64,000 bases of DNA. Source: Macrostomum lignano. Its lineage: Eukaryota. Below, piece after piece: positions 6,748 to 33,184 of this stretch. The notes beneath the pieces were generated by a model. The model was not told the DNA's origin and ran no database searches. It saw nothing but the letters and a program-made list of their open reading frames with translations. Position 1 is the first letter of the stretch, and every line of letters begins with the position of its first letter. Location of the stretch: contig NIVC01002746.1 of assembly GCA_002269645.1 (NCBI GenBank), forward strand, positions 62,001 through 126,000, given 5' to 3'. The position numbers and the translations under genes were made by a program.

Positions 6748-7034
6748 TTTTGTGGCCGCTGGCCAAATGAATGAAATCAATTCACGTAAGGCGAAGGAGA
6801 GGAGAGGTGGCTCTCAGCTACAGTGAGCTGGCCAATATATATTATCTGACTGATATGAGCTAGATGTACATCGATGCGCGTACGTTACATAATAGCATTG
6901 AGCATGCACATTCACAACATCATCCCCCGTGCAAAGAGGTGACAGATTACGGGTGGGATAAGCAGACGCATTAAAAAGCAAGCAATGTCAATGGAACAGT
7001 TTTCGGTGCATGAGCAGTCAGTTAGTCAAGTCAG

Positions 7035-10000: not shown

Positions 10001-10766
10001 CGGCGACGCTGATGCTGGAGCCGTTGTACGACACGAGATGTCTCTCCGACGGTCGCAGGGGGACCTTGGGTCCGAAAATCTTCCTGCAGGTCTGCATGTT
10101 GATGATGGAGACCTTGGCAGCTGTGTCCACCAACAGCGGAGTGCTGAACCCGTTGATCCTGACGCTGGCTCTCTTGTACTCGCCCTTCTTGTCCGTGCTG
10201 ACGGCGAAGATGCTTTGCTGAGCGGAGCTGTCGAAGTCGACACATTGAACCTTCTTCTGAGCCGAGTGCGGTGCCGTGGTGCTGCTCTTGCACACGCTGG
10301 CGAAGTGGTTAAGCTTCCCGCACTTCTTACACGCTTTGCCACGGGCAGCGCAGCGCGGGTCGCTGCCTGTGCGGTGGCCCGGCTTACCGCAGTGCGAGCA
10401 GCAGGACTCTTGCGGTGGTCGCGCTGCCTGGCCTCTGGTGCCAGTCGGAGCTCTCTTGGCGTTGATCTTCCTGATGCCGTCGTCAGCTGCATTCTTGCCG
10501 GTCAAGGACTTCTCACTCTGGATAGCTTTTTCCACCTGGGCGGCAATCTGGATTGCTCCGTCCAGGGTGAGCTCTTGCTCTAGCAGGAGGCGTTCGCGCA
10601 CCTTCGCTGATGAAGTGCCGAAGATCAGCTGGTCCAGGATGAGGTCGTCGTGAAGGCTCTGGAACTCACAGTCTCTGGCGGCATGACGCAAGTTTGCCAC
10701 GAATGCGTGCACGCCTTCGCCGCTCCGCTGGACGCACTTCCGGAAGTCATGGCGCTTGGCATACAC
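7035..10766 (-). CDS. Gag(C-terminal)-Pol polyprotein ORF, 1243 codons, lacking its native start
   Basis: Two Cys/His knuckles (CSHCGKPGH..C; CKKCGKLNHFASVC), aspartic protease-like LLVDTAA, RT motifs (FGISSAP, YQDD), RNase H (CDSS, DHQAL), integrase HHCC (AHQGHLG...CSAC) and core D,D,E motifs (QVDIVG, TTDNGPQF, NGGVERFN). Confidence 0.93.
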   Translation of the reverse strand: MYAKRHDFRKCVQRSGEGVHAFVANLRHAARDCEFQSLHDDLILDQLIFGTSSAKVRERLLLEQELTLDGAIQIAAQVEKAIQSEKSLTGKNAADDGIRKINAKRAPTGTRGQAARPPQESCCSHCGKPGHRTGSDPRCAARGKACKKCGKLNHFASVCKSSTTAPHSAQKKVQCVDFDSSAQQSIFAVSTDKKGEYKRASVRINGFSTPLLVDTAAKVSIINMQTCRKIFGPKVPLRPSERHLVSYNGSSISVAGEVDATVEFDCVQLPSFTFTVVMDGDDLMGIDLMDKLNCRVLGPSGHQIAAVESEEPPTTSMPEWIPAKYHALGTGLGEIKGFCHRPRVDPTVPPVAQRLRRLPLALRQECDSEIQRWEEEGIIERVDGDIPDWQSNVTCARKADGKLRLCVDLRSVNKAIIPDSMSLPTFADLVTEFTNSKFFSRIDLNQSYLQLPLHDDAKNLTCFHTESGLYRFRWMPFGISSAPAAFQKVVGKILQGIRGVVHYQDDIAVHAATEAEHEIRVLQVLDKLLQHRVTVNLKKCIFKASEIEFVGHRVSAAGIQPLQSHTESVSELKAPTNTAELASFLGFAKFFQFYIKNLSHVAEPLTALLRKDAPWNWDAKCEAAFSEVKRLISSAPCLKFFDQDHETVVSCDSSDVSLGATLSQVDEHGQLRPVAFASRALSDTERRYSASEKEALASFWSCEHWHLLLYGRKFKLLTDHQALTTLLSPRGVGQRPLRLQRWCERLFVYDFDIEYVPGKLNVQPDFLSRYGYDGKSAANESNEQHQSESDINLVLARSAEPISVTQLADATKSDNQLQRVIGFLINGWPVEVPADLKGFHQVQHELYLWNDGCCLARGSRAVIPTDLRDLVLAEAHQGHLGVAKVKARCRDTVWWPRIDSDVEAFVRNCSACVLSEKAFKPIKVPWSTTELPAGPWRQLQVDIVGELPEANVPQSHRFFIVVHDLYSKWPEIIASSSVTSAACIEALRSLFVRWGLPDEITTDNGPQFVSTEFTDFLSSLGIKHRRTPFYCPQQNGGVERFNGFIKTSLRALLADSVPVKQAVQELLLAYRSSEHALTKKSPAELMLGRKLRLPLDRLQPASTESTTDQELRRSVTERQQRAKSRRRMRKRNQPLKDAALTVGSRVRVRRPRRGKLSSGVSEPQTVVSREGNTITLTDGSRWHISRCILDDHHGWGDGADDTEALQQPDGGRPEAAPPPTPPLRRSERLRAPPQWFGNVVTHD

Positions 10767-11061
10767 GCTGACGGTGGCTGAAAGTGCTCCTTAAGCAGTT
10801 TGCATGCCGCTTTGAGTGTCGCTGGAGCTTCAGCTGGAGACTTGATAAGAGTCCGGTAGACTCGCACTCCTTCCCGCCCGAGGCAGTGCATGAGCAGTGC
10901 GATCTTCCTGGCTTCTTGCAAGCCGTCGACTCCTGACGCTAGCAGGTAGGTGTCGAACTCAGCGGCTCAAGTTTCCATGAAACCACAGGTGTTCCTGGGT
11001 TGTCGAGAAATGGAGGCGGTTCTCTCAGGTTTAGTCGTAGCGCTGGCGCTGTGGCGTTCAT
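10767..11061 (-). pseudogene. Frameshifted 5' end of gag (same lesions at 273-567 and 21263-21557)
   Basis: ATG at 11061 reads MNATAPALRLNLREPPPFLDNPGTPVVSWK. The frame then shifts near 10970 to AAEFDTYLLASGVDGLQEARKIALLMHCLG...KEHFQP, and shifts again near 10775 to TVSVYAKRH. Each shift is consistent with a 1-bp deletion. Confidence 0.85.
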
Positions 11062-11172
11062 TTCTAACTTCACTGAGTTGAGTTTGCAGAATTGCAAGGC
11101 GATAGCGAGAGTTTGACTTGTGTGCCTTGGCTGCCGTGAGTTGAGTTTTGCGCGGGGTAGTTTTTCGCTAAG

Positions 11173-11190
11173 TCCCTGCTTGCGATGCCA
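11173..11190 (-). promoter_or_regulatory. Primer-binding site of the LTR element (tRNA identity uncertain, possibly Ser)
   Basis: TGGCATCGCAAGCAGG lies 1 nt after the 5' LTR end; its complement ends in CCA like a tRNA 3' end. Confidence 0.7.
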
Positions 11191-13328
11191 GTGTTGTGGC
11201 CGCTGGCCAAGTGAATGAAATCAATTCACGTAAGGCGAAGGAGAGGAGAGGTGGCTCTCAGCTACAGTGAGCTGGCCAATATATATTATCTGACTGATAT
11301 GAGCTAGATGTACATCGATGCGCGTACGTTACATAATAGCATTGGGCATGCACATTCAAAACACCTGCGGCGCCAAAATGTGCCTGCGGCGCCAAATTGA
11401 GTGCCTGCGGCGCCAAAATGAGTGCCTGTGGCGCTAAAATGCGTGCCTGCAGCGCTAAAATGAGTGCCTGCGGCGCCAGAATGAGTGCCTGCGGCGCCAA
11501 ATTGAGTGCCTGCGGCGCTAAAATGAGTGCCTGCGGCGCTAAAATGAGTGCCTGCGGCGCTAAAATGAGTGCCTGCGGCGCTAAAATGAGTGCCTGAGGC
11601 GCTAAAAGTGGCAATGACATAAGGCATGGCCAGCCAGGCCAATCCGCCCCCCCCACCTAATTGAAATTCCTGGCATTTTGACTTAATACTTGACAGTTAT
11701 AGTTACTTCTGCCGTTTACCCAAAGTTGCGTTAATTTTGCTTTAGGGTTTTTTACATGTAAGTCGCATTTTTGTTAAAACTAAGTCGCATTTTTGTTAAA
11801 ACTAAGTCGCATTTTTGTTAAAACTAAGTCGCATTTTTGTTAAAACTAAGTCGCACGGCCGACCGAATTTTGGAGGTTGCGCATGTATGGACAAGAGTGA
11901 GACAAGAGTGATATTGTATGCTTGATAATACAATATCAAGCATCCCGACTGCAGAAGAATACACCATTATTTATTATGCTCTCAATAAATCGTTTTTTCA
12001 ACCTATGGTTGAAATATAGGTTTCTTAGAAATGAACTGAAGACCGGTATGAACGAATGCGTAAATCACGAGGGCTGAAGGCCCGACGGATTTATAAAATA
12101 GCTGCCGAAAAAGGCATGCCTTATATAGTCAAAAAGATTTTACGGGACATTATTGAATATTGGCAAATAAAATCCCGGAGAACACAAATAATGCCCGGAA
12201 AATGTTTTTATCTATGTTTTATGCAAATTCGTTGATACCGGTCTTCAGTTCATTTCTAACAAAATCGAGCGTAGCGTTCTACTGCAGTTGTAAATGGCTG
12301 TTGAAAGCTAGGACGGCAAACTCCCGGTCCGTGGAAGCCTCTCTATCCGGCCCTCGGCTTTTTTGAAACTTCACACTATATAGCAATCTGGCCCGCTCAT
12401 TAGGTTGTGCCTCTTCTCAGCTGTCTTTCTCTTCTCTACTCTCCTCTATTCCTGGCTCTCTTCTTCTCTCCCTTTCTCTCCCCCTCTTCTCTGCCCTTTT
12501 CTCTCCTCATATCTCTTCTCTCATCCAATCTCTCGCTTCTCCTCTTTTCTCTCCTTTCCTCTCTCTCGATTCTTTATCTGGCCTGCACCTTAAGGTAGAA
12601 AAGTTTCAGACTGCTGGTTTACACTCTCACCAATTATCAAACTTAGCGATGGCGCCTCTAGGATGGTGATAGATAGCGATAGCGGCCCTATTCCATCACT
12701 TTATTTATCGACTCTAATGACAGTTGCTACTATCAATTTTTATTTTGTTTTGTTGTTCCTTTTTGTGGGAAACGTTAACAATTGGGTTATTTATGAAAAA
12801 TTCAAGGCAATATTAATTTCAAACACGTATTAATAAATTATTAATCTGAATAACGCATATTAAAAGAACTTTTTCAAACATTGTGATCTTAAGGAATATA
12901 GATAAAGAATCCAGCTCATGGCTGCGGGCCAGATGAGAGAGAGAGGGGGGGGGGGAAAGGAGAGGCGAGAGATGGGATGAGAGAAGAGATTTAAGAGAAA
13001 AGATGAGAGAAAAGGGGAGAAGAGAGAGGGGAGAGGATCTGAGGGCCGCAATTCGCCAACACCTGTAGAGGAAACAGTCTACTAAATATGTAGTCCCATG
13101 CACCAGTGTTTACTAAATGCTCAAATTTTATATTGGCGCAGAAATGAAGTCGCACTTGTGTAAAAAGAATCTAGCAGAGCACACAATTGAGGAACAAATA
13201 TACTCAATGTTTTATTTGTTAAAATCCTTCAATGCCTGTTGCCTAACTAATTTGAAGTACTATAAGTGTCGAATTTCATTTCAGTTTCAATTGTTTTTCG
13301 AAACCTCTGTTTGCTATCATTGTCACAA

Positions 13329-14511
13329 TCAGTAGCAGAGCTGCTGGAGCAGCCGAAACTCAGACTCGTTGAGCATCTCACTGCTCAGGGCAAAGCAACT
13401 CATTGTGCCGCTCAGACATCTGTCACTTGTGGGCCCGAATCCGAGTCGCAGGCAGTGAAAGGACGCCGCTGAAGAGTTCCAAGAACTTCTACTAAACGAA
13501 GACGTCGCAACCAGCGTGCCGTTCTGATACATGCGCTTCTGCTCCAGCCCGTTGAAGGTGACTCCAGCCGACAGGAGATGCACGGAGCCGTCAGTCGGTA
13601 GAAAAAAAGACGAAAATCCGAAAATTCTCTCACCGACACTCCCGCCGCCGCTGGACAGCCAGGCGAAACCGTAGAAATACTCTGCTTTCTTGATCAGAGA
13701 GCTGCCGATGTTGGTTCCTGAGCACTCTTGGAATCGGCTGTAGTACTGATACCTGCTTGTGCAGCGGTAGAGGCGTGGCTAGAAGGTGAGCAGCGGTTTC
13801 AAAGCATCACAGACAGTTTCAACTCACTCGTCTTTAGTCATGGCGTGCCGAACCTGCGCAAAAGTCGAGTAGGTGGAACCGACTCCCAGAAGCTTCTCAA
13901 AACCGGGAGTCTCAGTGCTCAAGTAGGAGCTCGTGTTGCCCTTGAAGTGAGCACCTGCTGCATCAATTGTTACATCGTGAGCCTTGAGACAGGACAGTCT
14001 CGGGTTGACCTCATTCTTCAGACCGCTCCGAGAGAACTTGTAGAACAGCTTCAGCTTGAGCTGTTTCACCAGGGGCTCAGAAGACTCTGCAGTGATAAAT
14101 GAATAATCTATTTAAACAAAGCAAATGACTTCATTGTAGCGATACAGAATTGTCAAGACAGCAGCCACTGAGCCGCTCACCGCAGTCTCCGCACAGCCCA
14201 TCGGTGTACTTGTAAGAGTCGCAGTCGCCGTCATTCCATTGCTCGAGTTGGGAACACGCGTCTCCATGGTAACACAGGCGGGTGGCGATGTCGAAGTGGA
14301 ATGCGTTGCAGGTGGGCAGTCGGGAGCAGGCGGCGGCGCACTGCAGCTTGCTGGCCAGGCGGTGCGGCAGCGGAGAGGCGGCCGCGGTGGGGCAGCGTCG
14401 GGTCTTCTCGAATGCCAGCTCAGCAGCAGCAGCAAGTCTGAAAGAGACCAGTGAAAGAAGCAGAGCTAAAAAGTAATTCATCCTAGCTTGGAGTTTACTC
14501 CGTTTCATCAT
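13329..14511 (-). CDS. Type A PAN/LamG-like gene, second copy (exons 14511-14181, 14086-13828, 13752-13329)
   Basis: Matches 2834-4016 at offset 10495. Confidence 0.8.
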
Positions 14512-15426
14512 GGCTTGGTTTCGATCGATGCCTGCTGATTCACTCAGTTGCTCTCTATTTTACCTTTATAGGAAAATCTGACTCGTGCAGGCCTATTTGA
14601 TTGCCTCTGCACTCTGGTTACAAAATCAGCAAAGTTGAGTTCCTCTTGTTTCGTACTCAGGTCTCGATCCTTTTTATCAAAAGCATGGATGTCAGGCCTG
14701 ACAGCAGCATGCAGAATGTCCAACAATATGAAGCATTTTTTGTTTGAACAGCGACTGTATGCTTGCATGCATTTTTTACGAGCTTAGCTGGAAGTGAAGC
14801 GACCATGGCGTCAAACGCAAATCCGACAATTCTGGAATCGGAACACACAGTTCTGCTTGCAACCGACAAGGCCAAATTTTAAACAAGCGACAGTTGCATA
14901 CTCTTATTCCTCTGCAGTCCTGATGCATGATATTGAGTAAAACAGTCCACGCCTGCCGCCGATTTTAACGTCAATCAATTTTTAACAAGTTCCCAATCGG
15001 GTTTAGGACGTTCTATTACATTCTGAAAAGTTCGAAGTCGGTAGTAAACGCGAGAGTTTATTTTTGTGATGCAAACAATGTAACATATATTCGAATAGAC
15101 GCCCTGCTCCAGCACATAGATGCTCCAGCATATAAAATTTCGATTTCACAATTACAACTCTGAATACTGAGTTTGCGCGTACCTATTCAAAGGGGTTTTG
15201 TAAACATTCCATTTGAGAATTGTGGCCATTGTGTGAGGCGTGAGAACTGTGCGTGTTTTAAACACTGGACAAATATATGTAGGTGCTTGAAAGACACTCA
15301 GCAAGGAAAATTTTACACAGCTAACAAATCCTACATTTATAAATGTAGAATGGGATGCCTTTTTCTGAACCGTTCTTAATTTTGGAGCAGTTAATTTGAT
15401 TTGAAAAGTGTCTGCTAATACAGGAA

Positions 15427-16606
15427 ATGAAAAAGATTCGACTGTCGACTCTGCCCTGCCTCCTGCTGCTCAGCTGCCTGGTGGTGACTTCAAGCGCCAA
15501 GGTGCTGCCAAACTTCGCAGCAACAAAGACCCGACGCTGCCCCACCGCGGCCGCCTCTCCGCTGCCGCACCGCCTGGCCAGCAAGCTGCAGTGCGCCGCC
15601 GCCTGCTCCCGACTGCCCACCTGCAACGCATTCCACTTCGACATCGCCACCCGCCTGTGTTACCATGGAGACGCGTGTTCCCAACTCGAGCAATGGACTG
15701 ACGGCGACTGCGACTCTTACAAGTACACTGATGTGCTGTGCGGAGACTGCGGTGAGCGGCTCAGTGGCTGCTGTCTTGACAGCTCTGCGTCTCTCCAATG
15801 AAATCATTTACTTTGTTTAAATTGATTATAAATTTATCACTGCAGAGTCTTCTGAGCCCCTGTTGAAACAGCTCAAGCTGAAGCTGTTCTACAAGTTCTC
15901 TCGGAGCGGTCTGAAGAATGAGGTCAACCCGAGACTGTCCTGTCTCAAGGCTCACGACGTGACAATTGATGCAGCTGGTGCTCACTTCAAGGGCAACACG
16001 AGCTCCTACTTGAGCACTGAGACCCCCGGTTTTGAGAAGTTTCTTGGAGTCGGTTCCACCTACTCGACTTTTGCGCAGGTTCGGCACGCCATGTCCGGCG
16101 GGTGAGAAAGAATTCACTCTGCATTTAACATTAAATTGCTTGCAACTTACATGTATCACCTCTCTTGTATCACCTACCTCTGTGCATATAGGTGGCAGTA
16201 CTACAGCAGATTCCAAGAGTGCTCTGGAAATTACGCCAGCAATTCAATTTCCCAGTTTCAAGACTATTTCTACGTCTTTAATTGGCTGTCTACCAACACC
16301 GGCGAGGTTCTGTACGGACTATCACCAAACTTCCTCCCTACCGACGGCTCTGTGCATCTCCTGTCGGCTGGATTCACCTACGACGGACTCGAGTTTAGGG
16401 ACGTGTATAGGAACGGCACTTTGGAGGCGATTTATCGGACGGCTTACAACACTTATAGTTCTTCCATCGCCGCCTTTCAATGCCTCCGACTGGGATTTCA
16501 TCTCACAAGCGACCGTTGTCTCAACGGCTCAATGAGTTGCTTCGCCCTGAGCACTAAGATGCTCAATCAGACCGAATACGAGATGCTGCAGCAGCTCTGC
16601 TACTGA
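15427..16606 (+). CDS. Type B PAN/LamG-like gene, second copy (exons 15427-15751, 15846-16101, 16192-16606)
   Basis: Matches 4932-6111 at offset 10495. Confidence 0.8.
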
Positions 16607-17242
16607 TTCAACATAACCATCAGCACGAGTTGCAGTACAACCTGTTCCAAATGAGAAACCTACTTTTTGAAGTCAATTAGAAATTTGGACTTTTGCTTTT
16701 ACTGACATGTGCATGTAAAACGATTTCTGACCGCCAAGTCTCGAAAAAAATGAATACGACTGAATGGACCGATTAATTACGACCAATATTATTTAAAGCA
16801 CGAAAGCTTCAAGTGAGTAGTGCGAAGCAAGAAAATGAAGACTTTGCTTTTTAATTATTGCACTGCCAAGAGTTAATAGAATCGGGAATTCACTGCCGCG
16901 TCAATTACTGGTGCTTTTAGCATTGCGCAAGCACAGTTCATGGGGAGAGATTAGATTGGTTAGACTATAGTTTCAGCTTCCGTTGGTGATTCCCTGTGCA
17001 CTGTACAGAACAGTGAACAGTGATTCCCTTAATCGCCTGGGGGGTGGGGTTGGGCGCGGCGGATATCAAAAACCTGTAGGCAATTGAGTGCCTGTGGCGC
17101 TAAAATGCGTGCCTGCGGCGCCAAAATGAGTGCCTGCGGCGCCAAAATGAGTGCCTGCAGCGCAAAAATGAGTGCCTGCGGCGCCAAAATGAGTGCCTGC
17201 GGCGCCAAAATGAATGCCTGCGGCGCTTAAATGAGTGCCTGC

Positions 17243-20200
17243 TTTTGTGGCCGCTGGCCAAATGAATGAAATCAATTCACGTAAGGCGAAGGAGAGGAGA
17301 GGTGGCTCTCAGCTACAGTGAGCTGGCCAATATATATTATCTGACTGATATGAGCTAGATGTACATCGATGCGCGTACGTTACATAATAGCATTGAGCAT
17401 GCACATTCACAACATCATCCCCCCGTGCAAAGAGGTGACAGATTACGGGTGGGATAAGCAGACGCATTAAAAAGCAAGCAATGTCAATGGAACAGTTTTC
17501 GGTGCATGAGCAGTCAGTTAGTCAAGTCAGTCAATCGTGAGTCACAACGTTGCCGAACCATTGAGGCGGTGCACGAAGTCTCTCAGAGCGGCGCAGCGGT
17601 GGCGTTGGCGGTGGCGCCGCCTCTGGTCTCCCGCCGTCCGGCTGTTGCAGAGCCTCTGTGTCGTCGGCCCCGTCACCCCAGCCGTGGTGGTCATCAAGGA
17701 TGCAGCGGCTGATGTGCCAGCGGCTGCCATCGGTCAGAGTGATGGTGTTGCCCTCGCGACTGACGACTGTCTGTGGCTCGGAGACGCCGCTGCTGAGCTT
17801 TCCGCGCCTCGGCCGGCGGACGCGGACGCGGCTCCCGACAGTCAACGCTGCGTCCTTCAGCGGCTGGTTCCGCTTGCGCATCCGGCGGCGGCTCTTGGCC
17901 CGCTGCTGTCGCTCCGTGACGCTGCGCCGCAGCTCCTGGTCCGTCGTTGACTCGGTGCTTGCTGGTTGAAGACGATCGAGAGGCAGGCGGAGCTTCCGTC
18001 CCAGCATCAGTTCAGCCGGCGACTTCTTGGTCAGCGCGTGCTCAGATGATCGATACGCGAGCAGCAGCTCCTGAACCGCCTGCTTCACTGGCACACTGTC
18101 GGCGAGTAGTGCGCGCAGTGACGTCTTGATGAAGCCGTTGAATCTCTCGACTCCGCCATTCTGCTGTGGACAGTAGAACGGAGTGCGACGGTGCTTGATG
18201 CCGAGCGAGCTGAGGAAGTCCGTAAACTCGGTTGACACAAACTGAGGTCCGTTGTCCGTGGTAATTTCGTCTGGAAGCCCCCAGCGGACGAACAGGCTGC
18301 GAAGGGCTTCGATACACGCAGCGGAAGTCACGGATGAAGATGCGATGATCTCAGGCCACTTGGAGTAGAGATCGTGGACGACAATGAAAAATCGATGGGA
18401 CTGAGGCACATTGGCTTCCGGCAGCTCTCCAACTATATCGACTTGCAGCTGTCGCCATGGACCCGCTGGTAGCTCCGTCGTTGACCATGGGACCTTGATC
18501 GGCTTGAACGCTTTCTCGGACAGGACGCAGGCGCTGCAGTTCCGCACGAAGGCTTCCACGTCGCTGTCGATGCGCGGCCACCAGACCGTATCGCGGCACC
18601 GCGCCTTGACCTTGGCGACGCCGAGATGTCCTTGATGCGCCTCTGCCAGCACAAGGTCGCGGAGGTCAGTCGGGATGACGGCTCGGCTGCCTCTCGCCAG
18701 GCAGCAACCATCGTTCCACAGGTAGAGCTCGTGTTGCACCTGGTGGAAGCCCTTCAGGTCGGCTGGAACCTCGACTGGCCATCCGTTGATGAGGAACCCG
18801 ATGACTCGCTGCAGTTGGTTGTCGCTCTTGGTTGCGTCGGCCAGTTGAGTGACTGAGATCGGCTCGGCGCTTCTGGCCAGCACCAGGTTGATGTCGGACT
18901 CGCTCTGGTGCTGCTCATTGGACTCGTTGGCTGCGCTCTTGCCGTCGTAGCCGTAGCGAGACAGAAAGTCGGGCTGGACGTTGAGCTTGCCGGGGACGTA
19001 CTCGATGTCGAAGTCGTAGACGAAGAGTCGCTCGCACCAGCGCTGAAGTCGAAGAGGTCGTTGGCCGACTCCTCGAGGTGACAGCAGGGTCGTCAGCGCT
19101 TGATGGTCGGTGAGAAGCTTGAACTTGCGACCGTACAGCAGCAGGTGCCAATGCTCGCAGCTCCAGAAAGAGGCCAAGGCCTCTTTCTCTGACGCAGAGT
19201 AGCGGCGCTCGGTGTCGGATAGGGCTCGCGAAGCAAAGGCGACTGGCCGCAGCTGTCCGTGCTCGTCGACTTGGCTCAGGGTCGCGCCCAGGGAGACGTC
19301 GCTGCTGTCGCAGGAGACGACGGTTTCGTGATCTTGGTCGAAGAACTTCAGGCACGGTGCTGATGAGATGAGCCGCTTCACCTCGCTGAAGGCCGCCTCG
19401 CATTTCGCGTCCCAGTTCCATGGCGCGTCCTTGCGCAGGAGCGCTGTCAGCGGCTCGGCGACGTGAGACAGGTTCTTGATGTAGAACTGGAAGAACTTTG
19501 CAAAGCCGAGGAATGAAGCCAACTCTGCCGTATTTGTGGGTGCCTTGAGTTCCGATACGGACTCGGTGTGCGACTGGAGAGGTTGAATTCCCGCTGCGCT
19601 GACGCGGTGTCCGACGAACTCGATCTCCGACGCCTTGAAGATGCACTTCTTGAGGTTGACGGTTACTCGATGCTGCAGCAACTTGTCCAGTACCTGAAGT
19701 ACGCGAATTTCGTGCTCGGCTTCCGTAGCGGCGTGAACGGCGATGTCGTCTTGATAGTGAACGACGCCTCTGATGCCTTGGAGGATCTTGCCGACGACCT
19801 TCTGGAAAGCCGCCGGAGCCGAGCTGATGCCGAACGGCATCCATCTGAATCGGTAGAGGCCGGATTCGGTGTGGAAGCAGGTCAGATTCTTGGCGTCATC
19901 ATGCAGAGGCAGCTGTAGATACGACTGGTTGAGGTCGATCCTTGAGAAAAACTTCGAATTGGTGAATTCGGTCACCAGGTCGGCGAAGGTAGGCAGTGAC
20001 ATCGAGTCCGGGATGATCGCCTTGTTGACGCTTCGCAGATCAACGCAGAGGCGCAGCTTCCCATCGGCCTTGCGGGCACAGGTGACGTTGGACTGCCAGT
20101 CAGGGATGTCGCCGTCGACTCGCTCGATGATGCCTTCTTCCTCCCAGCGTTGAATCTCGCTGTCGCACTCCTGGCGCAGCGCTAGAGGCAGTCGGCGCAG

Positions 20201-21859
20201 ACGCTGAGCTACGGGAGGCACAGTTGGGTCAACTCTGGGACGGTGGCAGAACCCTTTGATCTCACCGAGTCCGGTGCCCAAGGCGTGGTACTTAGCTGGA
20301 ATCCATTCGGGCATCGACGTGGTCGGAGGCTCCTCGGACTCGACCGCAGCAATCTGATGTCCGGAAGGCCCGAGAACTCTGCAGTTCAGCTTGTCCATCA
20401 GGTCGATTCCCATCAGGTCATCGCCGTCCATGACGACGGTGAAGGTGAACGACGGGAGCTGGACGCAGTCGAACTCGACCGTGGCGTCGACCTCGCCGGC
20501 GACGCTGATGCTGGAGCCGTTGTACGACACGAGATGTCTCTCCGACGGTCGCAGGGGGACCTTGGGTCCGAAAATCTTCCTGCAGGTCTGCATGTTGATG
20601 ATGGAGACCTTGGCAGCTGTGTCCACCAACAGCGGAGTGCTGAACCCGTTGATCCTGACGCTGGCTCTCTTGTACTCGCCCTTCTTGTCCGTGCTGACGG
20701 CGAAGATGCTTTGCTGAGCGGAGCTGTCGAAGTCGACACATTGAACCTTCTTCTGAGCCGAGTGCGGTGCCGTGGTGCTGCTCTTGCACACGCTGGCGAA
20801 GTGGTTAAGCTTCCCGCACTTCTTACACGCTTTGCCACGGGCAGCGCAGCGCGGGTCGCTGCCTGTGCGGTGGCCCGGCTTACCGCAGTGCGAGCAGCAG
20901 GACTCTTGCGGTGGTCGCGCTGCCTGGCCTCTGGTGCCAGTCGGAGCTCTCTTGGCGTTGATCTTCCTGATGCCGTCGTCAGCTGCATTCTTGCCGGTCA
21001 AGGACTTCTCACTCTGGATAGCTTTTTCCACCTGGGCGGCAATCTGGATTGCTCCGTCCAGGGTGAGCTCTTGCTCTAGCAGGAGGCGTTCGCGCACCTT
21101 CGCTGATGAAGTGCCGAAGATCAGCTGGTCCAGGATGAGGTCGTCGTGAAGGCTCTGGAACTCACAGTCTCTGGCGGCATGACGCAAGTTTGCCACGAAT
21201 GCGTGCACGCCTTCGCCGCTCCGCTGGACGCACTTCCGGAAGTCATGGCGCTTGGCATACACGCTGACGGTGGCTGAAAGTGCTCCTTAAGCAGTTTGCA
21301 TGCCGCTTTGAGTGTCGCTGGAGCTTCAGCTGGAGACTTGATAAGAGTCCGGTAGACTCGCACTCCTTCCCGCCCGAGGCAGTGCATGAGCAGTGCGATC
21401 TTCCTGGCTTCTTGCAAGCCGTCGACTCCTGACGCTAGCAGGTAGGTGTCGAACTCAGCGGCTCAAGTTTCCATGAAACCACAGGTGTTCCTGGGTTGTC
21501 GAGAAATGGAGGCGGTTCTCTCAGGTTTAGTCGTAGCGCTGGCGCTGTGGCGTTCATTTCTAACTTCACTGAGTTGAGTTTGCAGAATTGCAAGGCGATA
21601 GCGAGAGTTTGACTTGTGTGCCTTGGCTGCCGTGAGTTGAGTTTTGCGCGGGGTAGTTTTTCGCTAAGTCCCTGCTTGCGATGCCAGTGTTGTGGCCGCT
21701 GGCCAAGTGAATGAAATCAATTCACGTAAGGCGAAGGAGAGGAGAGGTGGCTCTCAGCTACAGTGAGCTGGCCAATATATATTATCTGACTGATATGAGC
21801 TAGATGTACATCGATGCGCGTACGTTACATAATAGCATTGGGCATGCACATTCAAAACA
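17243..21859 (-). mobile_element. Second full-length copy of the same Ty3/Gypsy element
   Basis: LTRs at 17243-17414 and 21688-21859, with the same CCTGC TSD and the same LTR mismatches as the 6748-11363 copy. Confidence 0.96.
17531..21262 (-). CDS. Gag(C-terminal)-Pol polyprotein ORF, second copy
   Basis: Translation identical to 7035-10766. Confidence 0.93.
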   Translation of the reverse strand: MYAKRHDFRKCVQRSGEGVHAFVANLRHAARDCEFQSLHDDLILDQLIFGTSSAKVRERLLLEQELTLDGAIQIAAQVEKAIQSEKSLTGKNAADDGIRKINAKRAPTGTRGQAARPPQESCCSHCGKPGHRTGSDPRCAARGKACKKCGKLNHFASVCKSSTTAPHSAQKKVQCVDFDSSAQQSIFAVSTDKKGEYKRASVRINGFSTPLLVDTAAKVSIINMQTCRKIFGPKVPLRPSERHLVSYNGSSISVAGEVDATVEFDCVQLPSFTFTVVMDGDDLMGIDLMDKLNCRVLGPSGHQIAAVESEEPPTTSMPEWIPAKYHALGTGLGEIKGFCHRPRVDPTVPPVAQRLRRLPLALRQECDSEIQRWEEEGIIERVDGDIPDWQSNVTCARKADGKLRLCVDLRSVNKAIIPDSMSLPTFADLVTEFTNSKFFSRIDLNQSYLQLPLHDDAKNLTCFHTESGLYRFRWMPFGISSAPAAFQKVVGKILQGIRGVVHYQDDIAVHAATEAEHEIRVLQVLDKLLQHRVTVNLKKCIFKASEIEFVGHRVSAAGIQPLQSHTESVSELKAPTNTAELASFLGFAKFFQFYIKNLSHVAEPLTALLRKDAPWNWDAKCEAAFSEVKRLISSAPCLKFFDQDHETVVSCDSSDVSLGATLSQVDEHGQLRPVAFASRALSDTERRYSASEKEALASFWSCEHWHLLLYGRKFKLLTDHQALTTLLSPRGVGQRPLRLQRWCERLFVYDFDIEYVPGKLNVQPDFLSRYGYDGKSAANESNEQHQSESDINLVLARSAEPISVTQLADATKSDNQLQRVIGFLINGWPVEVPADLKGFHQVQHELYLWNDGCCLARGSRAVIPTDLRDLVLAEAHQGHLGVAKVKARCRDTVWWPRIDSDVEAFVRNCSACVLSEKAFKPIKVPWSTTELPAGPWRQLQVDIVGELPEANVPQSHRFFIVVHDLYSKWPEIIASSSVTSAACIEALRSLFVRWGLPDEITTDNGPQFVSTEFTDFLSSLGIKHRRTPFYCPQQNGGVERFNGFIKTSLRALLADSVPVKQAVQELLLAYRSSEHALTKKSPAELMLGRKLRLPLDRLQPASTESTTDQELRRSVTERQQRAKSRRRMRKRNQPLKDAALTVGSRVRVRRPRRGKLSSGVSEPQTVVSREGNTITLTDGSRWHISRCILDDHHGWGDGADDTEALQQPDGGRPEAAPPPTPPLRRSERLRAPPQWFGNVVTHD

Positions 21860-23799
21860 CCTGCGGCGCCAAAATGTGCCTGCGGCGCCAAATTGAGTGC
21901 CTGCGGCGCCAAAATGAGTGCCTGTGGCGCTAAAATGCGTGCCTGCAGCGCTAAAATGAGTGCCTGCGGCGCCAGAATGAGTGCCTGCGGCGCCAAATTG
22001 AGTGCCTGCGGCGCTAAAATGAGTGCCTGCGGCGCTAAAATGAGTGCCTGCGGCGCTAAAATGAGTGCCTGCGGCGCTAAAATGAGTGCCTGAGGCGCTA
22101 AAAGTGGCAATGACATAAGGCATGGCCAGCCAGGCCAATCCGCCCCCCCCACCTAATTGAAATTCCTGGCATTTTGACTTAATACTTGACAGTTATAGTT
22201 ACTTCTGCCGTTTACCCAAAGTTGCGTTAATTTTGCTTTAGGGTTTTTTACATGTAAGTCGCATTTTTGTTAAAACTAAGTCGCATTTTTGTTAAAACTA
22301 AGTCGCATTTTTGTTAAAACTAAGTCGCACGGCCGACCGAATTTTGGAGGTTGCGCATGTATGGACAAGAGTGAGACAAGAGTGATATTGTATGCTTGAT
22401 AATACAATATCAAGCATCCCGACTGCAGAAGAATACACCATTATTTATTATGCTCTCAATAAATCGTTTTTTCAACCTATGGTTGAAATATAGGTTTCTT
22501 AGAAATGAACTGAAGACCGGTATGAACGAATGCGTAAATCACGAGGGCTGAAGGCCCGACGGATTTATAAAATAGCTGCCGAAAAAGGCATGCCTTATAT
22601 AGTCAAAAAGATTTTACGGGACATTATTGAATATTGGCAAATAAAATCCCGGAGAACACAAATAATGCCCGGAAAATGTTTTTATCTATGTTTTATGCAA
22701 ATTCGTTGATACCGGTCTTCAGTTCATTTCTAACAAATCGAGCGTAGCGTTCTACTGCAGTTGTAAATGGCTGTTGAAAGCTAGGACGGCAAACTCCGGT
22801 CCGTGGAAGCCTCTCTATCCGGCCCTCGGCTTTTTTGAAACTTCACACTATATAGCAATCTGGCCCGCTCATTAGGTTGTGCCTCTTCTCAGCTGTCTTT
22901 CTCTTCTCTACTCTCCTCTATTCCTGGCTCTCTTCTTCTCTCCCTTTCTCTCCCCCTCTTCTCTGCCCTTTTCTCTCCTCATATCTCTTCTCTCATCCAA
23001 TCTCTCGCTTCTCCTCTTTTCTCTCCTTTCCTCTCTCTCGATTCTTTATCTGGCCTGCACCTTAAGGTAGAAAAGTTTCAGACTGCTGGTTTACACTCTC
23101 ACCAATTATCAAACTTAGCGATGGCGCCTCTAGGATGGTGATAGATAGCGATAGCGGCCCTATTCCATCACTTTATTTATCGACTCTAATGACAGTTGCT
23201 ACTATCAATTTTTATTTTGTTTTGTTGTTCCTTTTTGTGGGAAACGTTAACAATTGGGTTATTTATGAAAAATTCAAGGCAATATTAATTTCAAACACGT
23301 ATTAATAAATTATTAATCTGAATAACGCATATTAAAAGAACTTTTTCAAACATTGTGATCTTAAGGAATATAGATAAAGAATCCAGCTCATGGCTGCGGG
23401 CCAGATGAGAGAGAGAGGGGGGGGGGAAAGGAGAGGCGAGAGATGGGATGAGAGAAGAGATTTAAGAGAAAAGATGAGAGAAAAGGGGAGAAGAGAGAGG
23501 GGAGAGGATCTGAGGGCCGCAGTTCGCCAACACCTGTAGAGGAAACAGTCTACTAAATATGTAGTCCCATGCACCAGTGTTTACTAAATGCTCAAATTTT
23601 ATATTGGCGCAGAAATGAAGTCGCACTTGTGTAAAAAGAATCTAGCAGAGCACACAATTGAGGAACAAATATACTCAATGTTTTATTTGTTAAAATCCTT
23701 CAATGCCTGTTGCCTAACTAATTTGAAGTACTATAAGTGTCGAATTTCATTTCAGTTTCAATTGTTTTTCGAAACCTCTGTTTGCTATCATTGTCACAA

Positions 23800-24984
23800 T
23801 CAGTAGCAGAGCTGCTGGAGCAGCCGAAACTCAGACTCGTTGAGCATCTCACTGCTCAGGGCAAAGCAACTCATTGTGCCGCTCAGACATCTGTCACTTG
23901 TGGGCCCGAATCCGAGTCGCAGGCAGTGAAAGGACGCCGCTGAAGAGTTCCAAGAACTTCTACTAAACGAAGACGTCGCAACCAGCGTGCCGTTCTGATA
24001 CATGCGCTTCTGCTCCAGCCCGTTGAAGGTGACTCCAGCCGACAGGAGACGCACCGAGCCGTCAGTCGGTAGAAAAAAAGACGAAAATCCGAAAATTCTC
24101 TCACCGACACTCCCGCCGCCGCTGGACAGCCAGGCGAAACCGTAGAAATAATCTGCTTTCTTGATCAGAGAGCTGCCGATGTTGGTTCCTGAGCACTCTT
24201 GGAATCGGCTGTAGTACTGATACCTGCTTGTGCAGCGGTAGAGGCGCGGCTAGAAGGTGAGCAGCGGTTTCAAAGCATCACAGACAGTTTCAACTCACTC
24301 GTCTTTAGTCATGGCGTGCCGAACCTGCGCAAAAGTCGAGTAGGTGGAACCGACTCCCAGAAGCTTCTCAAAACCGGGAGTCTCAGTGCTCAAGTAGGAG
24401 CTCGTGTTGCCCTTGAAGTGAGCACCAACTGCATCAATTGTCACATCGTGAGCCCTGAGACAGGACAGTCTCGTGTTGACCTCATTCTTCAGACCGCTCC
24501 GAGAGAACTTGTAGAACAGCTTCAGCTTGAGCGGTTTGACCAGGGGCTCAGAAGACTCTGCAGTGGAACAGATCAATTTAAATCAATTTAAACAAAGCAA
24601 ATGACTTCATTGGAGCGATACAGAATTGTCAAGACAGCTGCAGCCACTGAGCCGCTCACCGCAGTCTCCGCACAGCACATCGGTGTACTTGTAAGAGTCG
24701 CAGTCGCCGTCAGTCCATTGCTCGAGTTGAGAACACGCGTCTCCATGGTAACACAGGCGGGTGGTAATGTCGAAGTGGAATGCGTTGCAGGTGGGCAGTC
24801 GGGAGCAGGCGGCGGCGCACTGCAGCTTGCTGGCCAGGCGGTGCGGCAGCGGAGAGGCGGCCGCGGTGGGGCAGCGTCGGGTCTTTGTTGCTGCGAAGTT
24901 TGGCAGCACCTTGGCGCTTGAAGTCGCCGCCAGGCAGCTGAGCAGCAGGAGGCAGGGCAGAGTCGACAGTCGAATCTTTTTCAT
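23800..24984 (-). CDS. Chimeric PAN/LamG-like gene: type-B leader/exon 1 with type-A exon 2 end and exon 3 (exons 24984-24660, 24557-24299, 24223-23800; 335 aa)
   Basis: Starts MKKIRLSTLPC (B type) but ends ...SEFRLLQQLCY (A type). The spliced CDS of 1008 nt is open. Confidence 0.8.
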
Positions 24985-25885
24985 TTCCTGTATTAGCAGA
25001 CACTTTTCAAATCAAATTAACTGCTCAAAAATTAAGAACGGTTCAGAAGACATCCCATTCTACATTTATAAATGTAGGATTTGTTAGCTGTGTTAAATTT
25101 TCCTTGCTGAGTGCCTTTCAAGCACCTACATATATTTGTCCAGTGTTTAAAACACGCACAGTTCTCACGCCTCACACAATGGCCACAATTCCCGGATGGA
25201 ATGTTTACAGAATCCCTTTGAATAGGTACGCGCAAACTCAGTATCCAGAGTTCTAATTGTGAAATCGAAATTTCAAATACTGGAGCAGTGACCATGGTGC
25301 ATATTCGAATAAATGTCACATTTTTTGCATAACAAAATTAAACTCGGGTTTACTACCGACTTCGAACTTTTCTGAATGTATTGGAACATCCTAAAACCTA
25401 TTGGGAACTTGATAAAAATTGACTGACGGTGCCGAATCGGAGACAGGCGTGGGCTGTTTTACCCAATATCATGCATCCCGACTGCAGAGGAATGTACAAC
25501 TCTTACTTGTTCCGATTTCCACCTTGCCTGATGCAAGCAAAACTGCGCGTCCCGCCTTCAGAATTGTCGGATTTGCGTTTGATTCGGGTCGCTTCAATTC
25601 CAGTTAGCTTTTTAAAAATACATGCAAGGATACAGTCGCTGTTCAAACAAAAAATGCTTCATATTGTTTGACATTCTGCATGCTGCTGTCAGGCCTGACA
25701 TCCATGCTTTTGATAAAAGCATCGATACTTGCTGAGTACAAAACAAAGAGAAACTCAACTTTTCTGAATTTGCAACCAGCTAGAAGGCAGAGGTGATCAA
25801 ATAAGCCAGCACGAGTCAGATTTTCCTATAAAGGTAAAATAGAGAGCAACTGAGTGAATCAGCAGGCATCGATCGAAACCAAGCC

Positions 25886-27082
25886 ATGATGAAACGGAGT
25901 AAACTCCAAGCTAGGATGAATTACTTTTTAGCTCTGCTTCTTTCACTGGTCTCTTTCAGACTTGCTGCTGCTGCTGCTGAGCTGTCATTCGAGAAGACCC
26001 GACGCTGCCCCACCGCGGCCGCCTCTCCGCTGCCGCACCGCCTGGCCAGCAAGCTGCAGTGCGCCGCCGCCTGCTCCCGACTGCCCACCTGCAACGCATT
26101 CCACTTCGACATCGCCACCCGCCTGTGTTACCATGGAGACGCGTGTTCCCAACTCGAGCAATGGACTGACGGCGACTGCGCGACTCTTACAAGTACACCG
26201 ATGTGCTGTGCGGAGACTGCGGTGAGCGGCTCAGCGGCTGCTGTCTTGACAGCTCTGCGTCTCTCCAATGAAATCATTTACTTTGTTTAAACTGATTATA
26301 AATTTATCACTGCAGAGTCTTCTGAGCCCTTGGTGAAACAGCTCAAGCTGAAGCTGTTCTACAAGTTCTCTCGGAGCGGTCTGAAGAATGAGGTCAACCC
26401 GAGAATGTCCTGTCTCAAGGCTCACGATGTAACAGTTGATGCAGCTGGTGCTCACTTCAAGGGCAACACGGGCTCCTATCTGAGCACTGAGACTCCCGGT
26501 TTTGAGAAGTTTCTGGGAGTCGGTTCCACCTACTCGACTTTTGCTCAGGTTCGGCACGTTTTTACTAGCGGGTGAGTCGTTTTCGCTAGACTTGAGCAGA
26601 TAGATTAGCTCGTACATGCATTTCGTAGTGCTTGACCATGAGAATGCTATCACTGCAGGAGACAGTACTACAGCAGGTTCCAGGCGTGCTCGGGCAGTGG
26701 CATTGGTTGCTCGCTCATCAAGAATGATGATTACTTTTACGGCTATGCCTGGCTGTCCGCTGACGGTACTGTTGGTGAGAAGATATACGGCTATTCGAGC
26801 TATTTTCTGCCGGTTGACGGAGCTGAGCACCTGTTCTCTGCTGGGGTTACCTTCGACCGGAACGGACACCAGCGCGTGTACCAAAACGGATCGCTGGTCG
26901 GAGTTTCACGAACTTCAAATGCCCCTCTTGATCGATCAAACGTGGTGTTTCAGTGCCTGCGACTCGGCTCGTCATCAAGCGATGCAACCTGTCTAAAAGG
27001 TAGCATGCTGTGCTTTGCGCTGAGCACGAAACTTCTCAATAAAACAGAGTTTCTGCGGCTGCAACAGGTGTGCAACGAGTAG
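25886..27082 (+). pseudogene. PAN/LamG-like gene with type-A leader and a third (type C) exon 3; +2 frameshift near 26180 (exons 25886-26221, 26316-26571, 26659-27082)
   Basis: GACTGCGCGACTC here versus GACTGCGACTC in the paralogs. Splice sites and exons 2 and 3 are otherwise intact. Could be a sequencing error. Confidence 0.7.

Positions 27083-33121: not shown

Positions 33122-33184
<63 letters not shown>

What the first reader, a model, noticed from the sequence alone, without database searches (positions are those of the whole stretch)
23800..27082. Flip-flop cassette: the promoter/leader segment between head-to-head PAN-LamG genes occurs in both orientations and re-pairs 5' and 3' modules
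Seen in sequence: in the amplified units the minus gene starts MMKRSK (leader A) and the plus gene starts MKKIRL (leader B). In the third pair the approximately 0.9-kb intergenic region plus both leaders is the reverse complement (and has diverged), so leader B joins exon 3 type A and leader A joins a new exon 3 type C. The plus gene keeps a B-type intron 1 and exon 2 length, and the minus gene keeps an A-like intron 1, which places the exchange in or at the edge of the shared PAN-coding block. Established: recombination between inverted repeats inverts the DNA between them, as in bacterial shufflons and phase variation. Inference: this locus may act as an invertible switch that combines 2 promoter/signal-peptide modules with at least 3 variable lectin-like C-terminal exons. 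No recombinase gene is visible, so general homologous recombination is the default explanation.
Basis: partly seen in the sequence, partly recalled or inferred. Interest (0 to 1): 0.82.

Follow-up and report, generated by a model that had tools for sequence, protein, structure and literature searches.

The report
Inverted promoter cassette between paired lectin genes
In a flatworm (probably Macrostomum lignano) gene cluster, the 1.1-kb promoter and signal-peptide segment between two back-to-back lectin-like genes is flipped in one of three gene pairs; this looks like an old recombination between the genes' own inverted repeats, an ordinary kind of genome rearrangement, and nothing here shows a working switch.

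Summary
Pairs 1 and 2 (minus gene MMKRSK, plus gene MKKIRL) and pair 3 (minus MKKIRL, plus MMKRSK) share a core of 570-bp inverted arm, 1.1-kb spacer and 570-bp inverted arm. The pair-3 spacer (24886-25993) is the reverse complement of 3912-5030: 91.5% identity, against 36% in the forward control. Site patterns switch reciprocally in both genes inside the same 261-bp PAN-coding interval.

This is the signature of homologous recombination between inverted repeats. Evidence for a switch is absent. The spacer centres differ by K2P 0.15. The arms of pair 3 share no pair-specific substitutions, so there is no concerted evolution. No site-specific recombinase or short recombination sites are present. 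The leader A + exon 3 type C gene carries a 2-bp frameshift.

The exchange point lies upstream of the whole lectin fold. Inversion therefore swaps only promoter and signal peptide, not binding modules.

The "amplified units" are a 10,494-bp, nearly identical tandem repeat that also carries an intact LTR retrotransposon. Its identity tract ends inside the pair-3 minus gene.

Orientation heterogeneity could not be tested because no external DNA was reachable. Verdict: a new example of a known kind (inversion mediated by inverted repeats, or NAHR, in a gene family), of modest interest.

The parts
23800..24984 (-). Gene M3 (pair 3, minus strand). Exons 24984-24660, 24557-24299, 24223-23800; intact, 335 aa. 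It has leader B (MKKIRL), the PAN block, an A-like intron 1, A-type exon 2 (259 nt) and A-type exon 3.
   Evidence: model and translation. (exon 3 99.3% identical to A1; exon 1 98.2% identical to B1). (site patterns).
25886..27082 (+). Gene P3 (pair 3, plus strand). Exons 25886-26221, 26316-26571, 26659-27082. It has leader A (MMKRSK), the PAN block, B-type intron 1, a 256-nt exon 2 and a unique exon 3 'type C'. As assembled it is frameshifted and is probably a pseudogene.
   Evidence: the translation as assembled stops after 118 aa; it reads through to 337 aa only if 2 nt are removed conceptually..
26178..26182 (+). 2-bp (GC/CG) insertion in P3 exon 1, relative to the five other copies. It shifts the frame and gives a premature TGA at 26334-26336.
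   Evidence: insertion private to P3, alignment columns 292-293.
24315..24885 (.). Left inverted-repeat arm of pair 3: the PAN-coding part of exon 1, intron 1 and exon 2 of M3.
   Evidence: 24315-24885 matches 26558-25994 at 93.2% over 574 columns. (alignment).
25994..26558 (.). Right inverted-repeat arm of pair 3: the PAN-coding part of exon 1, intron 1 and exon 2 of P3.
24886..25993 (.). Inverted cassette: both signal-peptide leaders plus the 901-bp divergent intergenic (promoter) region. It is the reverse complement of 3912-5030 and of 14407-15525.
   Evidence: 91.5% identity; forward control 36%. (K2P 0.016 on the A side, 0.153 in the centre, 0.031 on the B side).
24626..24886 (-). Exchange interval in M3. 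Leader-type markers end at 24886 and side-type markers begin at 24626. It includes the 119-bp stretch 24767-24885, which is perfectly identical to 25994-26112 in inverted orientation.
25993..26252 (+). The reciprocal exchange interval in P3.
2834..6111 (.). Reference pair 1: A1 (minus, 2834-4016) and B1 (plus, 4932-6111). Arms are 3344-3911 and 5031-5598 (96.3% identical; perfect 172-bp inverted match 3740-3911 / 5031-5202). The spacer is 3912-5030.
13329..16606 (.). Reference pair 2 (A2 and B2). Arms and spacer are identical to pair 1.
   Evidence: spacer of pair 1 = spacer of pair 2..
1..24427 (+). 10,494-bp tandem repeat, about 2.3 units in the window (1-10494, 10495-20989, 20990 to about 24.4 kb). 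Units 1 and 2 differ by only 2-3 single-base indels. Divergence of unit 3 from units 1 and 2 rises in steps: about 0.13% up to 24049, about 1.1% up to 24427, about 5.7% beyond.
7035..10766 (-). Context, not part of the cassette: an intact 1,243-aa pol-type ORF of a Ty3/gypsy-like LTR retrotransposon inside each tandem unit. It has protease, RT, RNase H and integrase domains.

Best explanation
These are head-to-head pairs of secreted PAN/Apple + ConA-like (LamG-type) lectin-like genes. The family appears restricted to Macrostomum-like flatworms.

In each pair the 5' halves of the two genes (PAN block, intron 1, exon 2) form a 570-bp inverted repeat. This repeat flanks a 1.1-kb segment that holds both core promoters and both signal-peptide leaders.

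After pair 3 and the ancestor of pairs 1 and 2 separated, a homologous-recombination event between the two arms inverted the segment in one lineage. The crossover lay in the most conserved, GC-rich 261-bp PAN interval. Promoter plus signal peptide were thereby swapped between the two genes.

Shown:
- the inversion;
- the inverted repeats;
- the reciprocal breakpoint interval;
- the module-wise divergence.

Inferred:
- it was a single germline event (NAHR-type crossover) rather than a programmed or frequent switch;
- its effect is regulatory only, because the mature proteins are essentially unchanged.

Later events were a recent 10.5-kb tandem amplification, whose identity tract ends inside M3, and a frameshift in P3.
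For: Inversion and arms:
- One contiguous 2,274-bp inverted alignment at 92%, plus inverted-repeat arms at 96.3% and 93.2%.
- Spacer 91.5% identical in reverse orientation against 36% forward.

Reciprocal breakpoints:
- Sixty-odd leader-type sites are followed, after 261 uninformative columns, by 7 side-type sites in intron 1 and more at the end of exon 2. The interval is the same in both genes.
- The longest perfect inverted matches (172 bp and 119 bp) sit exactly at the inner arm edges.

The arms are young homology rather than only constrained sequence:
- dS is 0-0.06 in PAN, 0.05-0.18 in exon 2 and 0.8 to saturated in exon 3.
- Intron 1 aligns at 81-98%, while intron 2 is unalignable.
- PAN GC3 is 76-81%, against 60-69% elsewhere. 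This is compatible with a recombination and gene-conversion hot spot.

Old and not frequent:
- Spacer centre K2P is 0.153.
- There are no pair-specific shared sites in the arms.
- No recombinase was seen other than the integrase of an LTR retrotransposon.

Protein identity:
- Pfam PAN_1 and Laminin_G_3 hits lie just below the cutoffs.
- In the AF2 model, residues 110-331 have block-mean pLDDT of about 66-97, mostly 85-95.
- Foldseek matches ConA-like jelly-roll domains with probability 1.0.

Inversions mediated by inverted repeats through NAHR are common and recurrent in other genomes (PMC3961182, PMC9731477).
Against: - Only one assembly was available, so fixation or polymorphism is unknown.
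- The arms are mosaics: one leader-type site sits inside exon 2, and P3 exon 2 has mixed affinities. More than one exchange has therefore occurred, and a single crossover is a simplification.
- Spacer divergence is U-shaped. The ends (K2P 0.016 and 0.031) are much more similar than the centre. This needs either promoter and leader constraint or additional later conversions in inverted register.
- Exon 3 relationships do not fit a simple duplication of whole pairs. A-B is the closest pair (69.9%). C has the A-type length (424 nt) and is slightly closer to A.
- Which lineage inverted cannot be determined without an outgroup.
Confidence: 0.72

Rival explanations
1. Live flip-flop. The cassette still inverts recurrently by homologous recombination between the arms. 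This could be in the germline, as a population polymorphism like the S. cerevisiae chromosome XIV flip/flop region. It could be somatic, as a regulated switch like Ogataea MAT. Either way promoter and leader modules would be re-paired with different lectin bodies.
For: - The architecture is right: inverted repeats flank a promoter and leader cassette.
- There are perfect 119-172-bp inverted matches at the inner arm edges.
- The PAN block has the lowest dS (0-0.06) and the highest GC3 of the gene.
- The PAN block is 98.7% identical at the protein level even in a paralogue whose exon 2 is 60% and exon 3 is 40% identical. This suggests repeated exchange in that block.
- Precedents driven by homologous recombination without a recombinase exist (PMC4238957, PMC9731477).
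Against: - No two orientations are seen at one locus. Pairs 1 and 2 are recent copies and carry no independent information.
- There are no pair-specific shared substitutions, against dozens of private ones, in the arms of pair 3. Private M3 changes at 24730 and 24765-24766 lie inside the PAN block itself and have not been homogenised.
- Intron 1 keeps distinct A and B types (88% identity).
- P3 is frameshifted.
- Flipping does not change the mature proteins.
- The arms are only 93-96% identical. By general knowledge, spontaneous recombination between repeats this short and this diverged is rare per cell division.
Confidence: 0.12
2. There was no intralocus inversion. One version is that the pair-3 core received leaders and spacer by interlocus gene conversion or double crossover with a pair-1-like donor aligned in inverted register, which is possible because the arms are palindromic. 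The other version is that pair 3 began as an inverted duplicate of a whole pair and later had its outer parts converted.
For: - The 5' core (92% identical) is far younger than the 3' exons (61-70%, with intron 2 and the 3' flanks unalignable). Cores have therefore moved between 3' contexts.
- The spacer ends are nearly identical between A1 and P3 and between B1 and M3 (K2P 0.016 and 0.031), while the centre is at 0.153. This suggests later conversions in inverted register.
- Exon 3 type C has the A-type length and is closer to A than to B.
- The 3' part of M3 has demonstrably been overwritten or co-amplified recently.
Against: - This needs two or more coordinated events to give the reciprocal switch in the same interval in both genes. 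One crossover explains it.
- The whole spacer, centre included, is colinear in reverse orientation.
- The A-like intron-1 sites of M3 lie in the old, diverged zone, outside the recent identity tract.
Confidence: 0.11
3. Assembly artefact. Either the spacer was placed in the wrong orientation between inverted repeats, or the consensus is a chimera of paralogous or homeologous copies in a repeat-rich neopolyploid genome.
For: - Units 1 and 2 differ only by single-base indels typical of consensus errors.
- M. lignano assemblies are known to be hard because of a recent whole-genome duplication (PMC10733133).
- Segments between inverted repeats are orientation-ambiguous for short reads.
- The 2-bp insertion in P3 could itself be an error.
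Against: - Spacer 3 is a distinct sequence (93 substitutions plus indels against spacers 1 and 2), not a misplaced copy.
- The perfectly identical inverted stretch is only 119 bp, and the window contains kilobase-scale minisatellites. That implies long reads that would span the 2.26-kb core.
- A reciprocal switch in both arms is not what random chimerism gives.
Confidence: 0.05

Closest known systems
Inversions mediated by inverted repeats through non-allelic homologous recombination (for example the human polymorphic inversions in Aguado et al. 2014, PMC3961182)
   Same: The inverted segment is bounded by highly similar inverted repeats. The breakpoints fall inside the repeats. No dedicated recombinase is involved. 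Gene conversion makes the arms mosaic.
   Different: - The scale here is very small: 1.1 kb between 0.57-kb arms.
- The arms are the 5' halves of two divergently transcribed paralogues, so the inversion swaps promoters and signal peptides.
- The two orientations are seen only at paralogous loci, not as alleles.
Saccharomyces chromosome XIV 24-kb flip/flop region between inverted Centroid gene pairs (Salzberg et al. 2022, PMC9731477)
   Same: The inverted repeats are made of duplicated, fast-evolving family genes in inverted orientation. Inversion is by homologous recombination between them. The result is an evolutionary re-pairing and not a physiological switch; that paper reports orientation to be stable on laboratory timescales.
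   Different: - In yeast the inverted repeats are continually homogenised within strains and the region re-inverts repeatedly. Here the arms show no pair-specific homogenisation.
- The yeast repeats contain whole genes, and the 15 genes between them are merely reoriented.
Ogataea (Hansenula) polymorpha mating-type switching by inversion between inverted repeats (Maekawa & Kaneko 2014, PMC4238957)
   Same: A eukaryotic, recombinase-free inversion between inverted repeats that changes which gene is expressed.
   Different: - There the inversion is induced by starvation, and both orientations are demonstrable.
- The read-out there is positional silencing.
- None of these properties is shown or testable here.
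Bacterial shufflons, invertons and phase-variable hsdS systems
   Same: DNA between inverted repeats is inverted and 5' and 3' coding modules are re-paired.
   Different: - Those systems use short specific sites and a dedicated Ser or Tyr recombinase, and they generate new protein specificities.
- Here the repeats are 570 bp of gene homology and no such recombinase is present.
- Here the swapped coding part is only the cleaved signal peptide.

Membership tests
Inversion mediated by inverted repeats (NAHR-type) | Two highly similar repeats in inverted orientation flank the inverted segment | tested here: met
   24315-24885 against 25994-26558 at 93.2%; 3344-3911 against 5031-5598 at 96.3%.
Inversion mediated by inverted repeats (NAHR-type) | The segment between the repeats is colinear with the other arrangement in reverse complement over its full length | tested here: met
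   1,108 against 1,119 bp, 91.5% identity in reverse and 36% forward; every 100-bp window aligns (76-100%).
Inversion mediated by inverted repeats (NAHR-type) | Breakpoints lie inside the repeats, with a reciprocal switch of flanking markers | tested here: met
   leader-type sites run up to the inner arm edge and side-type sites start in intron 1. The 261-column interval is the same in M3 and P3.
Inversion mediated by inverted repeats (NAHR-type) | The two orientations occur at the same (orthologous or allelic) locus | not testable with these tools
   Only paralogous pairs within one assembly could be compared. No external DNA was found.
Site-specific invertible switch (shufflon, Hin/Gin, fimS-type) | A dedicated serine or tyrosine recombinase is encoded nearby | tested here: not met
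   ORF lists of the window (minimum ORF length 90, 80 and 180 aa) show only the retroviral-type integrase of an LTR retrotransposon. Only that ORF was searched against Pfam, so the screen is not exhaustive.
Site-specific invertible switch (shufflon, Hin/Gin, fimS-type) | Short, specific inverted recombination sites at the borders | tested here: not met
   The borders are 570-bp blocks of gene homology (exon 1, intron 1, exon 2). The exchange lies anywhere within a 261-bp identical block.
Flip/flop switch driven by homologous recombination (Ogataea MAT, Saccharomyces FF region) | Inverted-repeat arms are kept homogeneous within a genome by repeated exchange | tested here: not met
   no pair-specific shared sites. 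There are 28 alignment columns private to M3 and 18 private to P3, including M3-private sites inside the PAN block. Arm identity is 93.2% in pair 3.
Flip/flop switch driven by homologous recombination (Ogataea MAT, Saccharomyces FF region) | Both orientations are observed among cells or individuals, and orientation changes expression | not testable with these tools
   No reads, population data or RNA data were available.
PAN/Apple domain proteins | A significant match to a PAN/Apple profile with the conserved cysteine core | tested here: inconclusive
   Pfam PAN_1 gives E 0.0015-0.0022 and 18-19 bits against a cutoff of 21.4. Relatives reach 21.3 bits. UniRef names the M. lignano relatives 'Apple domain-containing protein'. 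The AF2 confidence for this part is low, pLDDT about 50-60.
Concanavalin A-like lectin / LamG superfamily | A jelly-roll beta-sandwich fold | tested here: met
   In the AF2 model with a 16-sequence alignment, residues 110-331 are mostly at pLDDT 85-95. Foldseek against the PDB gives 291 hits at E<=0.001; the top hits are ConA-like jelly-roll receptor-binding subdomains at probability 1.0, with 12-17% identity. Pfam Laminin_G_3 is just below the cutoff (27.4 against 27.6 bits in relative P0019). This is fold-level evidence only; sugar binding was not tested.

The most novel reading that the evidence does not exclude
The cassette may still be flipping. At one or more of the three pairs both orientations would coexist among worms, or among cells, through recombination in the perfectly identical PAN block. 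The animal would then re-pair two promoter and signal-peptide modules with different lectin bodies. That would be a recombinase-free invertible promoter in a metazoan.
Probability: 0.1. Interest if true: 0.7.

Novelty: new member of a known kind. Interest (0 to 1): 0.3.

Why it matters
As it stands, this is a clean small-scale example of how gene conversion between divergently transcribed paralogues creates inverted repeats, and of how those repeats then permit promoter and leader swapping by inversion. It is a route to regulatory reshuffling in a lineage-specific, fast-diversifying family of secreted lectin-like proteins.

It also flags practical points for annotating this genome:
- a nearly identical 10.5-kb tandem amplification that carries an intact LTR retrotransposon;
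- a chimeric gene at the edge of the amplification;
- a frameshifted family member.

It would matter much more only if both orientations were found at one locus. That would be an invertible promoter cassette in an animal, working without a dedicated recombinase.

Tried and rejected
External DNA to test orientation in other individuals or species:
- Two exact-pattern scans of metagenome contigs (PAN block and exon 2) found nothing.
- Look-ups of encoding contigs failed. The relatives P0001 and P0003 and the four exon-1 read-through ORFs of the window are not on record.
- Protein searches returned only 3 M. lignano UniRef relatives. Only 21 relatives turned up among 1.84 billion representatives. 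None has type A, B or C exon 3 at high identity, so leader-by-exon-3 combinations elsewhere could not be examined.

Structure and sequence searches:
- The first AF2 run, with a 5-sequence alignment, was useless (pLDDT 32).
- The PDB sequence-profile search gave nothing significant.

Ideas considered and rejected:
- The inverted piece as part of the recent amplification, as in a DUP-TRP/INV-DUP-type replicative rearrangement. The units differ by about 0-0.1% but the inverted spacer differs by 8.5-15%.
- Similarity of the arms as purely protein constraint. Intron 1 is alignable, and dS steps from 0.05-0.18 in exon 2 to more than 0.8 in exon 3.
- Positive selection on exon 3. Pairwise dN/dS is 0.25-0.38, which gives no support.
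- An alternative splice site that rescues the P3 frameshift. By inspection, the one nearby alternative GT donor I checked does not restore the frame, and the shifted stretch would in any case destroy conserved cysteines.
Full report
**What the window is**

The sequence is eukaryotic, with GT..AG introns. The only protein relatives are Macrostomum lignano UniRef entries named "Apple domain-containing protein". One of them, A0A1I8GWZ0, matches the pair-3 minus gene exactly across the PAN block and is 96-98.7% identical to the other window copies. The window is therefore very probably M. lignano or a close relative. That species is a neopolyploid flatworm with a repeat-rich genome (PMC10733133).

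**Large-scale structure**

A self-comparison shows a 10,494-bp direct tandem repeat: 1-10494, 10495-20989, and a partial third unit starting at 20990.

- Units 1 and 2 differ by only 2-3 single-base indels.
- Unit 3 is almost identical up to about 24049 (about 0.13% different). It is about 1.1% different up to 24427 and about 5.7% different beyond.
- Each unit holds one head-to-head gene pair plus an intact Ty3/gypsy-type LTR retrotransposon. The pol ORF is at 7035-10766 on the minus strand, with protease, RT, RNase H and integrase domains.

**Gene models**

All six genes have three exons.

| Gene | Strand | Exons | Start |
|---|---|---|---|
| A1 | minus | 4016-3686 / 3591-3333 / 3257-2834 | MMKRSK |
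| B1 | plus | 4932-5256 / 5351-5606 / 5697-6111 | MKKIRL |
| M3 | minus | 24984-24660 / 24557-24299 / 24223-23800 | MKKIRL |
| P3 | plus | 25886-26221 / 26316-26571 / 26659-27082 | MMKRSK |

- A2 and B2 are copies of A1 and B1 at +10,495.
- Five genes are intact (331-337 aa).
- P3 has a 2-bp insertion within 26178-26182 that none of the other copies has. It shifts the frame and gives a stop at 26334-26336. P3 is a probable pseudogene unless the insertion is a consensus error.

**Checking the observation**

Each pair has inverted-repeat arms made of the PAN-coding part of exon 1, intron 1 and exon 2.

- Pair 1: 3344-3911 against 5031-5598, 96.3% identical.
- Pair 3: 24315-24885 against 25994-26558, 93.2% identical.

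Between the arms lie both leaders and the intergenic region (915 bp and 901 bp from ATG to ATG). The pair-3 segment 24886-25993 aligns to 3912-5030 only as reverse complement. It has 1002 matches, 93 mismatches and 37 gap columns (91.5% identity); the forward control gives 36%.

Module identities:

- Exon 1: A1-P3 97.6%, B1-M3 98.2%.
- Intron 1: B1-P3 97.9%, A1-M3 87.3%, B1-M3 82.5%.
- Exon 3: A1-M3 99.3%, C-A 66.7%, C-B 60.8%, A-B 69.9%.

A four-way site-pattern analysis gives a sharp picture.

- Every informative site from the ATG to the inner arm edge groups A1=P3 | B1=M3.
- Then come 261 columns with only private changes.
- Then 7 intron-1 sites group A1=M3 | B1=P3, followed by further such sites at the end of exon 2.

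The switch is reciprocal and falls in the same interval in both genes: 24626-24886 in M3 and 25993-26252 in P3.

**What the proteins are**

- Pfam gives PAN_1 and Laminin_G_3 hits just under the curated cutoffs, both for the window proteins and for their relatives.
- An exhaustive profile search found only 21 relatives in 1.84 billion representatives. This is a small, lineage-restricted family.
- With a 16-sequence alignment, AlphaFold2 models residues 110-331 as a beta-sandwich, mostly at pLDDT 85-95.
- Foldseek matches ConA-like jelly-roll domains with probability 1.0 at 12-17% identity. This is a statement about fold only.
- The N-termini look like signal peptides. This is by inspection, not by a predictor.
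- The jelly-roll is built from exon 2 and exon 3 together, so exon 3 is not an autonomous module.
- The exchange point lies upstream of the whole fold. The flip therefore re-pairs only promoter, 5'UTR and signal peptide with a lectin body.

**How the structure arose**

Synonymous divergence steps by module: PAN 0-0.06, exon 2 0.05-0.18, exon 3 0.8 to saturated. Intron 1 is alignable and intron 2 is not. The arms are therefore young homology, from gene conversion or duplication of the 5' module between the two divergent genes, and not merely constrained sequence.

The PAN block stands out in several ways.

- It has the lowest dS of the gene.
- It has the highest GC (65-66%; GC3 76-81%).
- It holds the longest perfect inverted matches: 172 bp in pair 1 and 119 bp in pair 3, both at the inner arm edges.
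- It is 98.7% identical at the protein level even in a paralogue whose exon 2 is 60% and exon 3 is 40% identical.

PAN is thus the preferred substrate for exchange in this family, and the mapped breakpoint lies there. A crossover between inverted repeats inverts what lies between them. One such event explains the whole pattern.

**Why this is not shown to be a switch**

1. The centre of the spacer differs by K2P 0.153 between pair 1 and pair 3. This is similar to exon-2 dS, so the two arrangements have been separate for a long time.
2. The arms of pair 3 have no pair-specific shared substitutions but many private ones, including M3-private changes inside the PAN block. In a region that keeps flipping by homologous recombination, the arms are homogenised within a genome (PMC9731477).
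3. No site-specific recombinase and no short specific sites are present. The only integrase belongs to the retrotransposon.
4. P3 is frameshifted.
5. No new mature protein can arise from flipping.
6. Part of the "leader B + exon 3 A" pairing is confounded, because the 3' part of M3 lies in the recent identity tract shared with A1 and A2. However, the A-like intron-1 sites of M3 lie outside that tract.

**Residual complications**

- The arms are mosaics, so more than one exchange has occurred.
- Spacer divergence is U-shaped: K2P 0.016 on the A side, 0.153 in the centre and 0.031 on the B side. This needs either promoter and leader constraint or later conversions in inverted register between A1 and P3 and between B1 and M3.
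- Exon-3 relationships do not match a simple duplication of whole pairs.

Interlocus conversion in inverted register, or an inverted duplication of a whole pair followed by conversions, therefore remains a minor alternative. An assembly artefact is unlikely: spacer 3 is a distinct sequence, the perfect inverted identity is only 119 bp, and the window's kilobase-scale minisatellites imply long reads.

**Limits**

No external DNA could be obtained. Orientation heterogeneity, polarity of the event and the reality of the P3 frameshift remain untested.

**Comparison and verdict**

The feature works like the inversions mediated by inverted repeats (NAHR) that are known from human polymorphic inversions (PMC3961182) and from the Saccharomyces chromosome XIV flip/flop region flanked by inverted family genes (PMC9731477). 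It resembles the Ogataea MAT inversion switch (PMC4238957) and bacterial shufflons only in geometry. It is a new example of a known kind and of modest interest. The switch reading keeps a probability of about 10% and would be notable if long reads showed both orientations at one locus.

Noticed in passing
window 26178-26182 (stop at 26334-26336): The pair-3 plus gene (leader A + exon 3 type C) has a 2-bp GC/CG insertion that is absent from all five other copies. It shifts the frame near the end of exon 1. The rest of the gene is still an open frame, so this is either a recent pseudogene or a consensus error.
   Followed up: partly
window 1-24427: There is a 10,494-bp tandem repeat, about 2.3 units in the window; the array may continue upstream of position 1. 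Units 1 and 2 differ by only 2-3 single-base indels. The identity of unit 3 decays in steps (about 0.13%, 1.1%, 5.7% divergence) and ends inside gene M3, which makes M3 a chimera at the edge of the amplification.
   Followed up: partly
window 6587-11607 (and 17082-22103; right end of another copy at 1-1113): Each tandem unit carries a Ty3/gypsy-type LTR retrotransposon with an intact 1,243-aa ORF (7035-10766, minus strand; protease, RT, RNase H, integrase). It is bounded by 170-bp repeats next to 21-bp minisatellite arrays. Its role in the amplification was not examined.
   Followed up: partly
window 27700-64000: More than 20 different mini- and microsatellite arrays sit between what look like exons of minus-strand genes. 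Examples are (TGAG)n at 33097-34431, (ACAG)n at 46006-46608 and 49864-50515, a 22-mer repeated 114 times at 54304-56937, and a 30-mer repeated 40 times at 52393-53630. The density is unusually high.
   Followed up: no
PAN block: 3686-3911, 5031-5256, 24660-24885, 25994-26221: The PAN-coding block is nearly identical in all copies (dS 0-0.06). It is also 98.7% identical at the protein level to a M. lignano paralogue (A0A1I8GWZ0) that is only 60% identical in exon 2 and 40% in exon 3. Another paralogue (P0006) has only 45% identity in PAN. This points to exon-specific homogenisation across the family.
   Followed up: partly
window 3912-5030 against 24886-25993: Divergence along the inverted spacer is U-shaped. 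The roughly 190 bp next to leader A and the roughly 330 bp next to leader B are 97-98% identical between pairs, while the centre is 86% identical (76.5% in 4301-4400). This reflects either conserved core promoters or later gene conversions in inverted register.
   Followed up: partly
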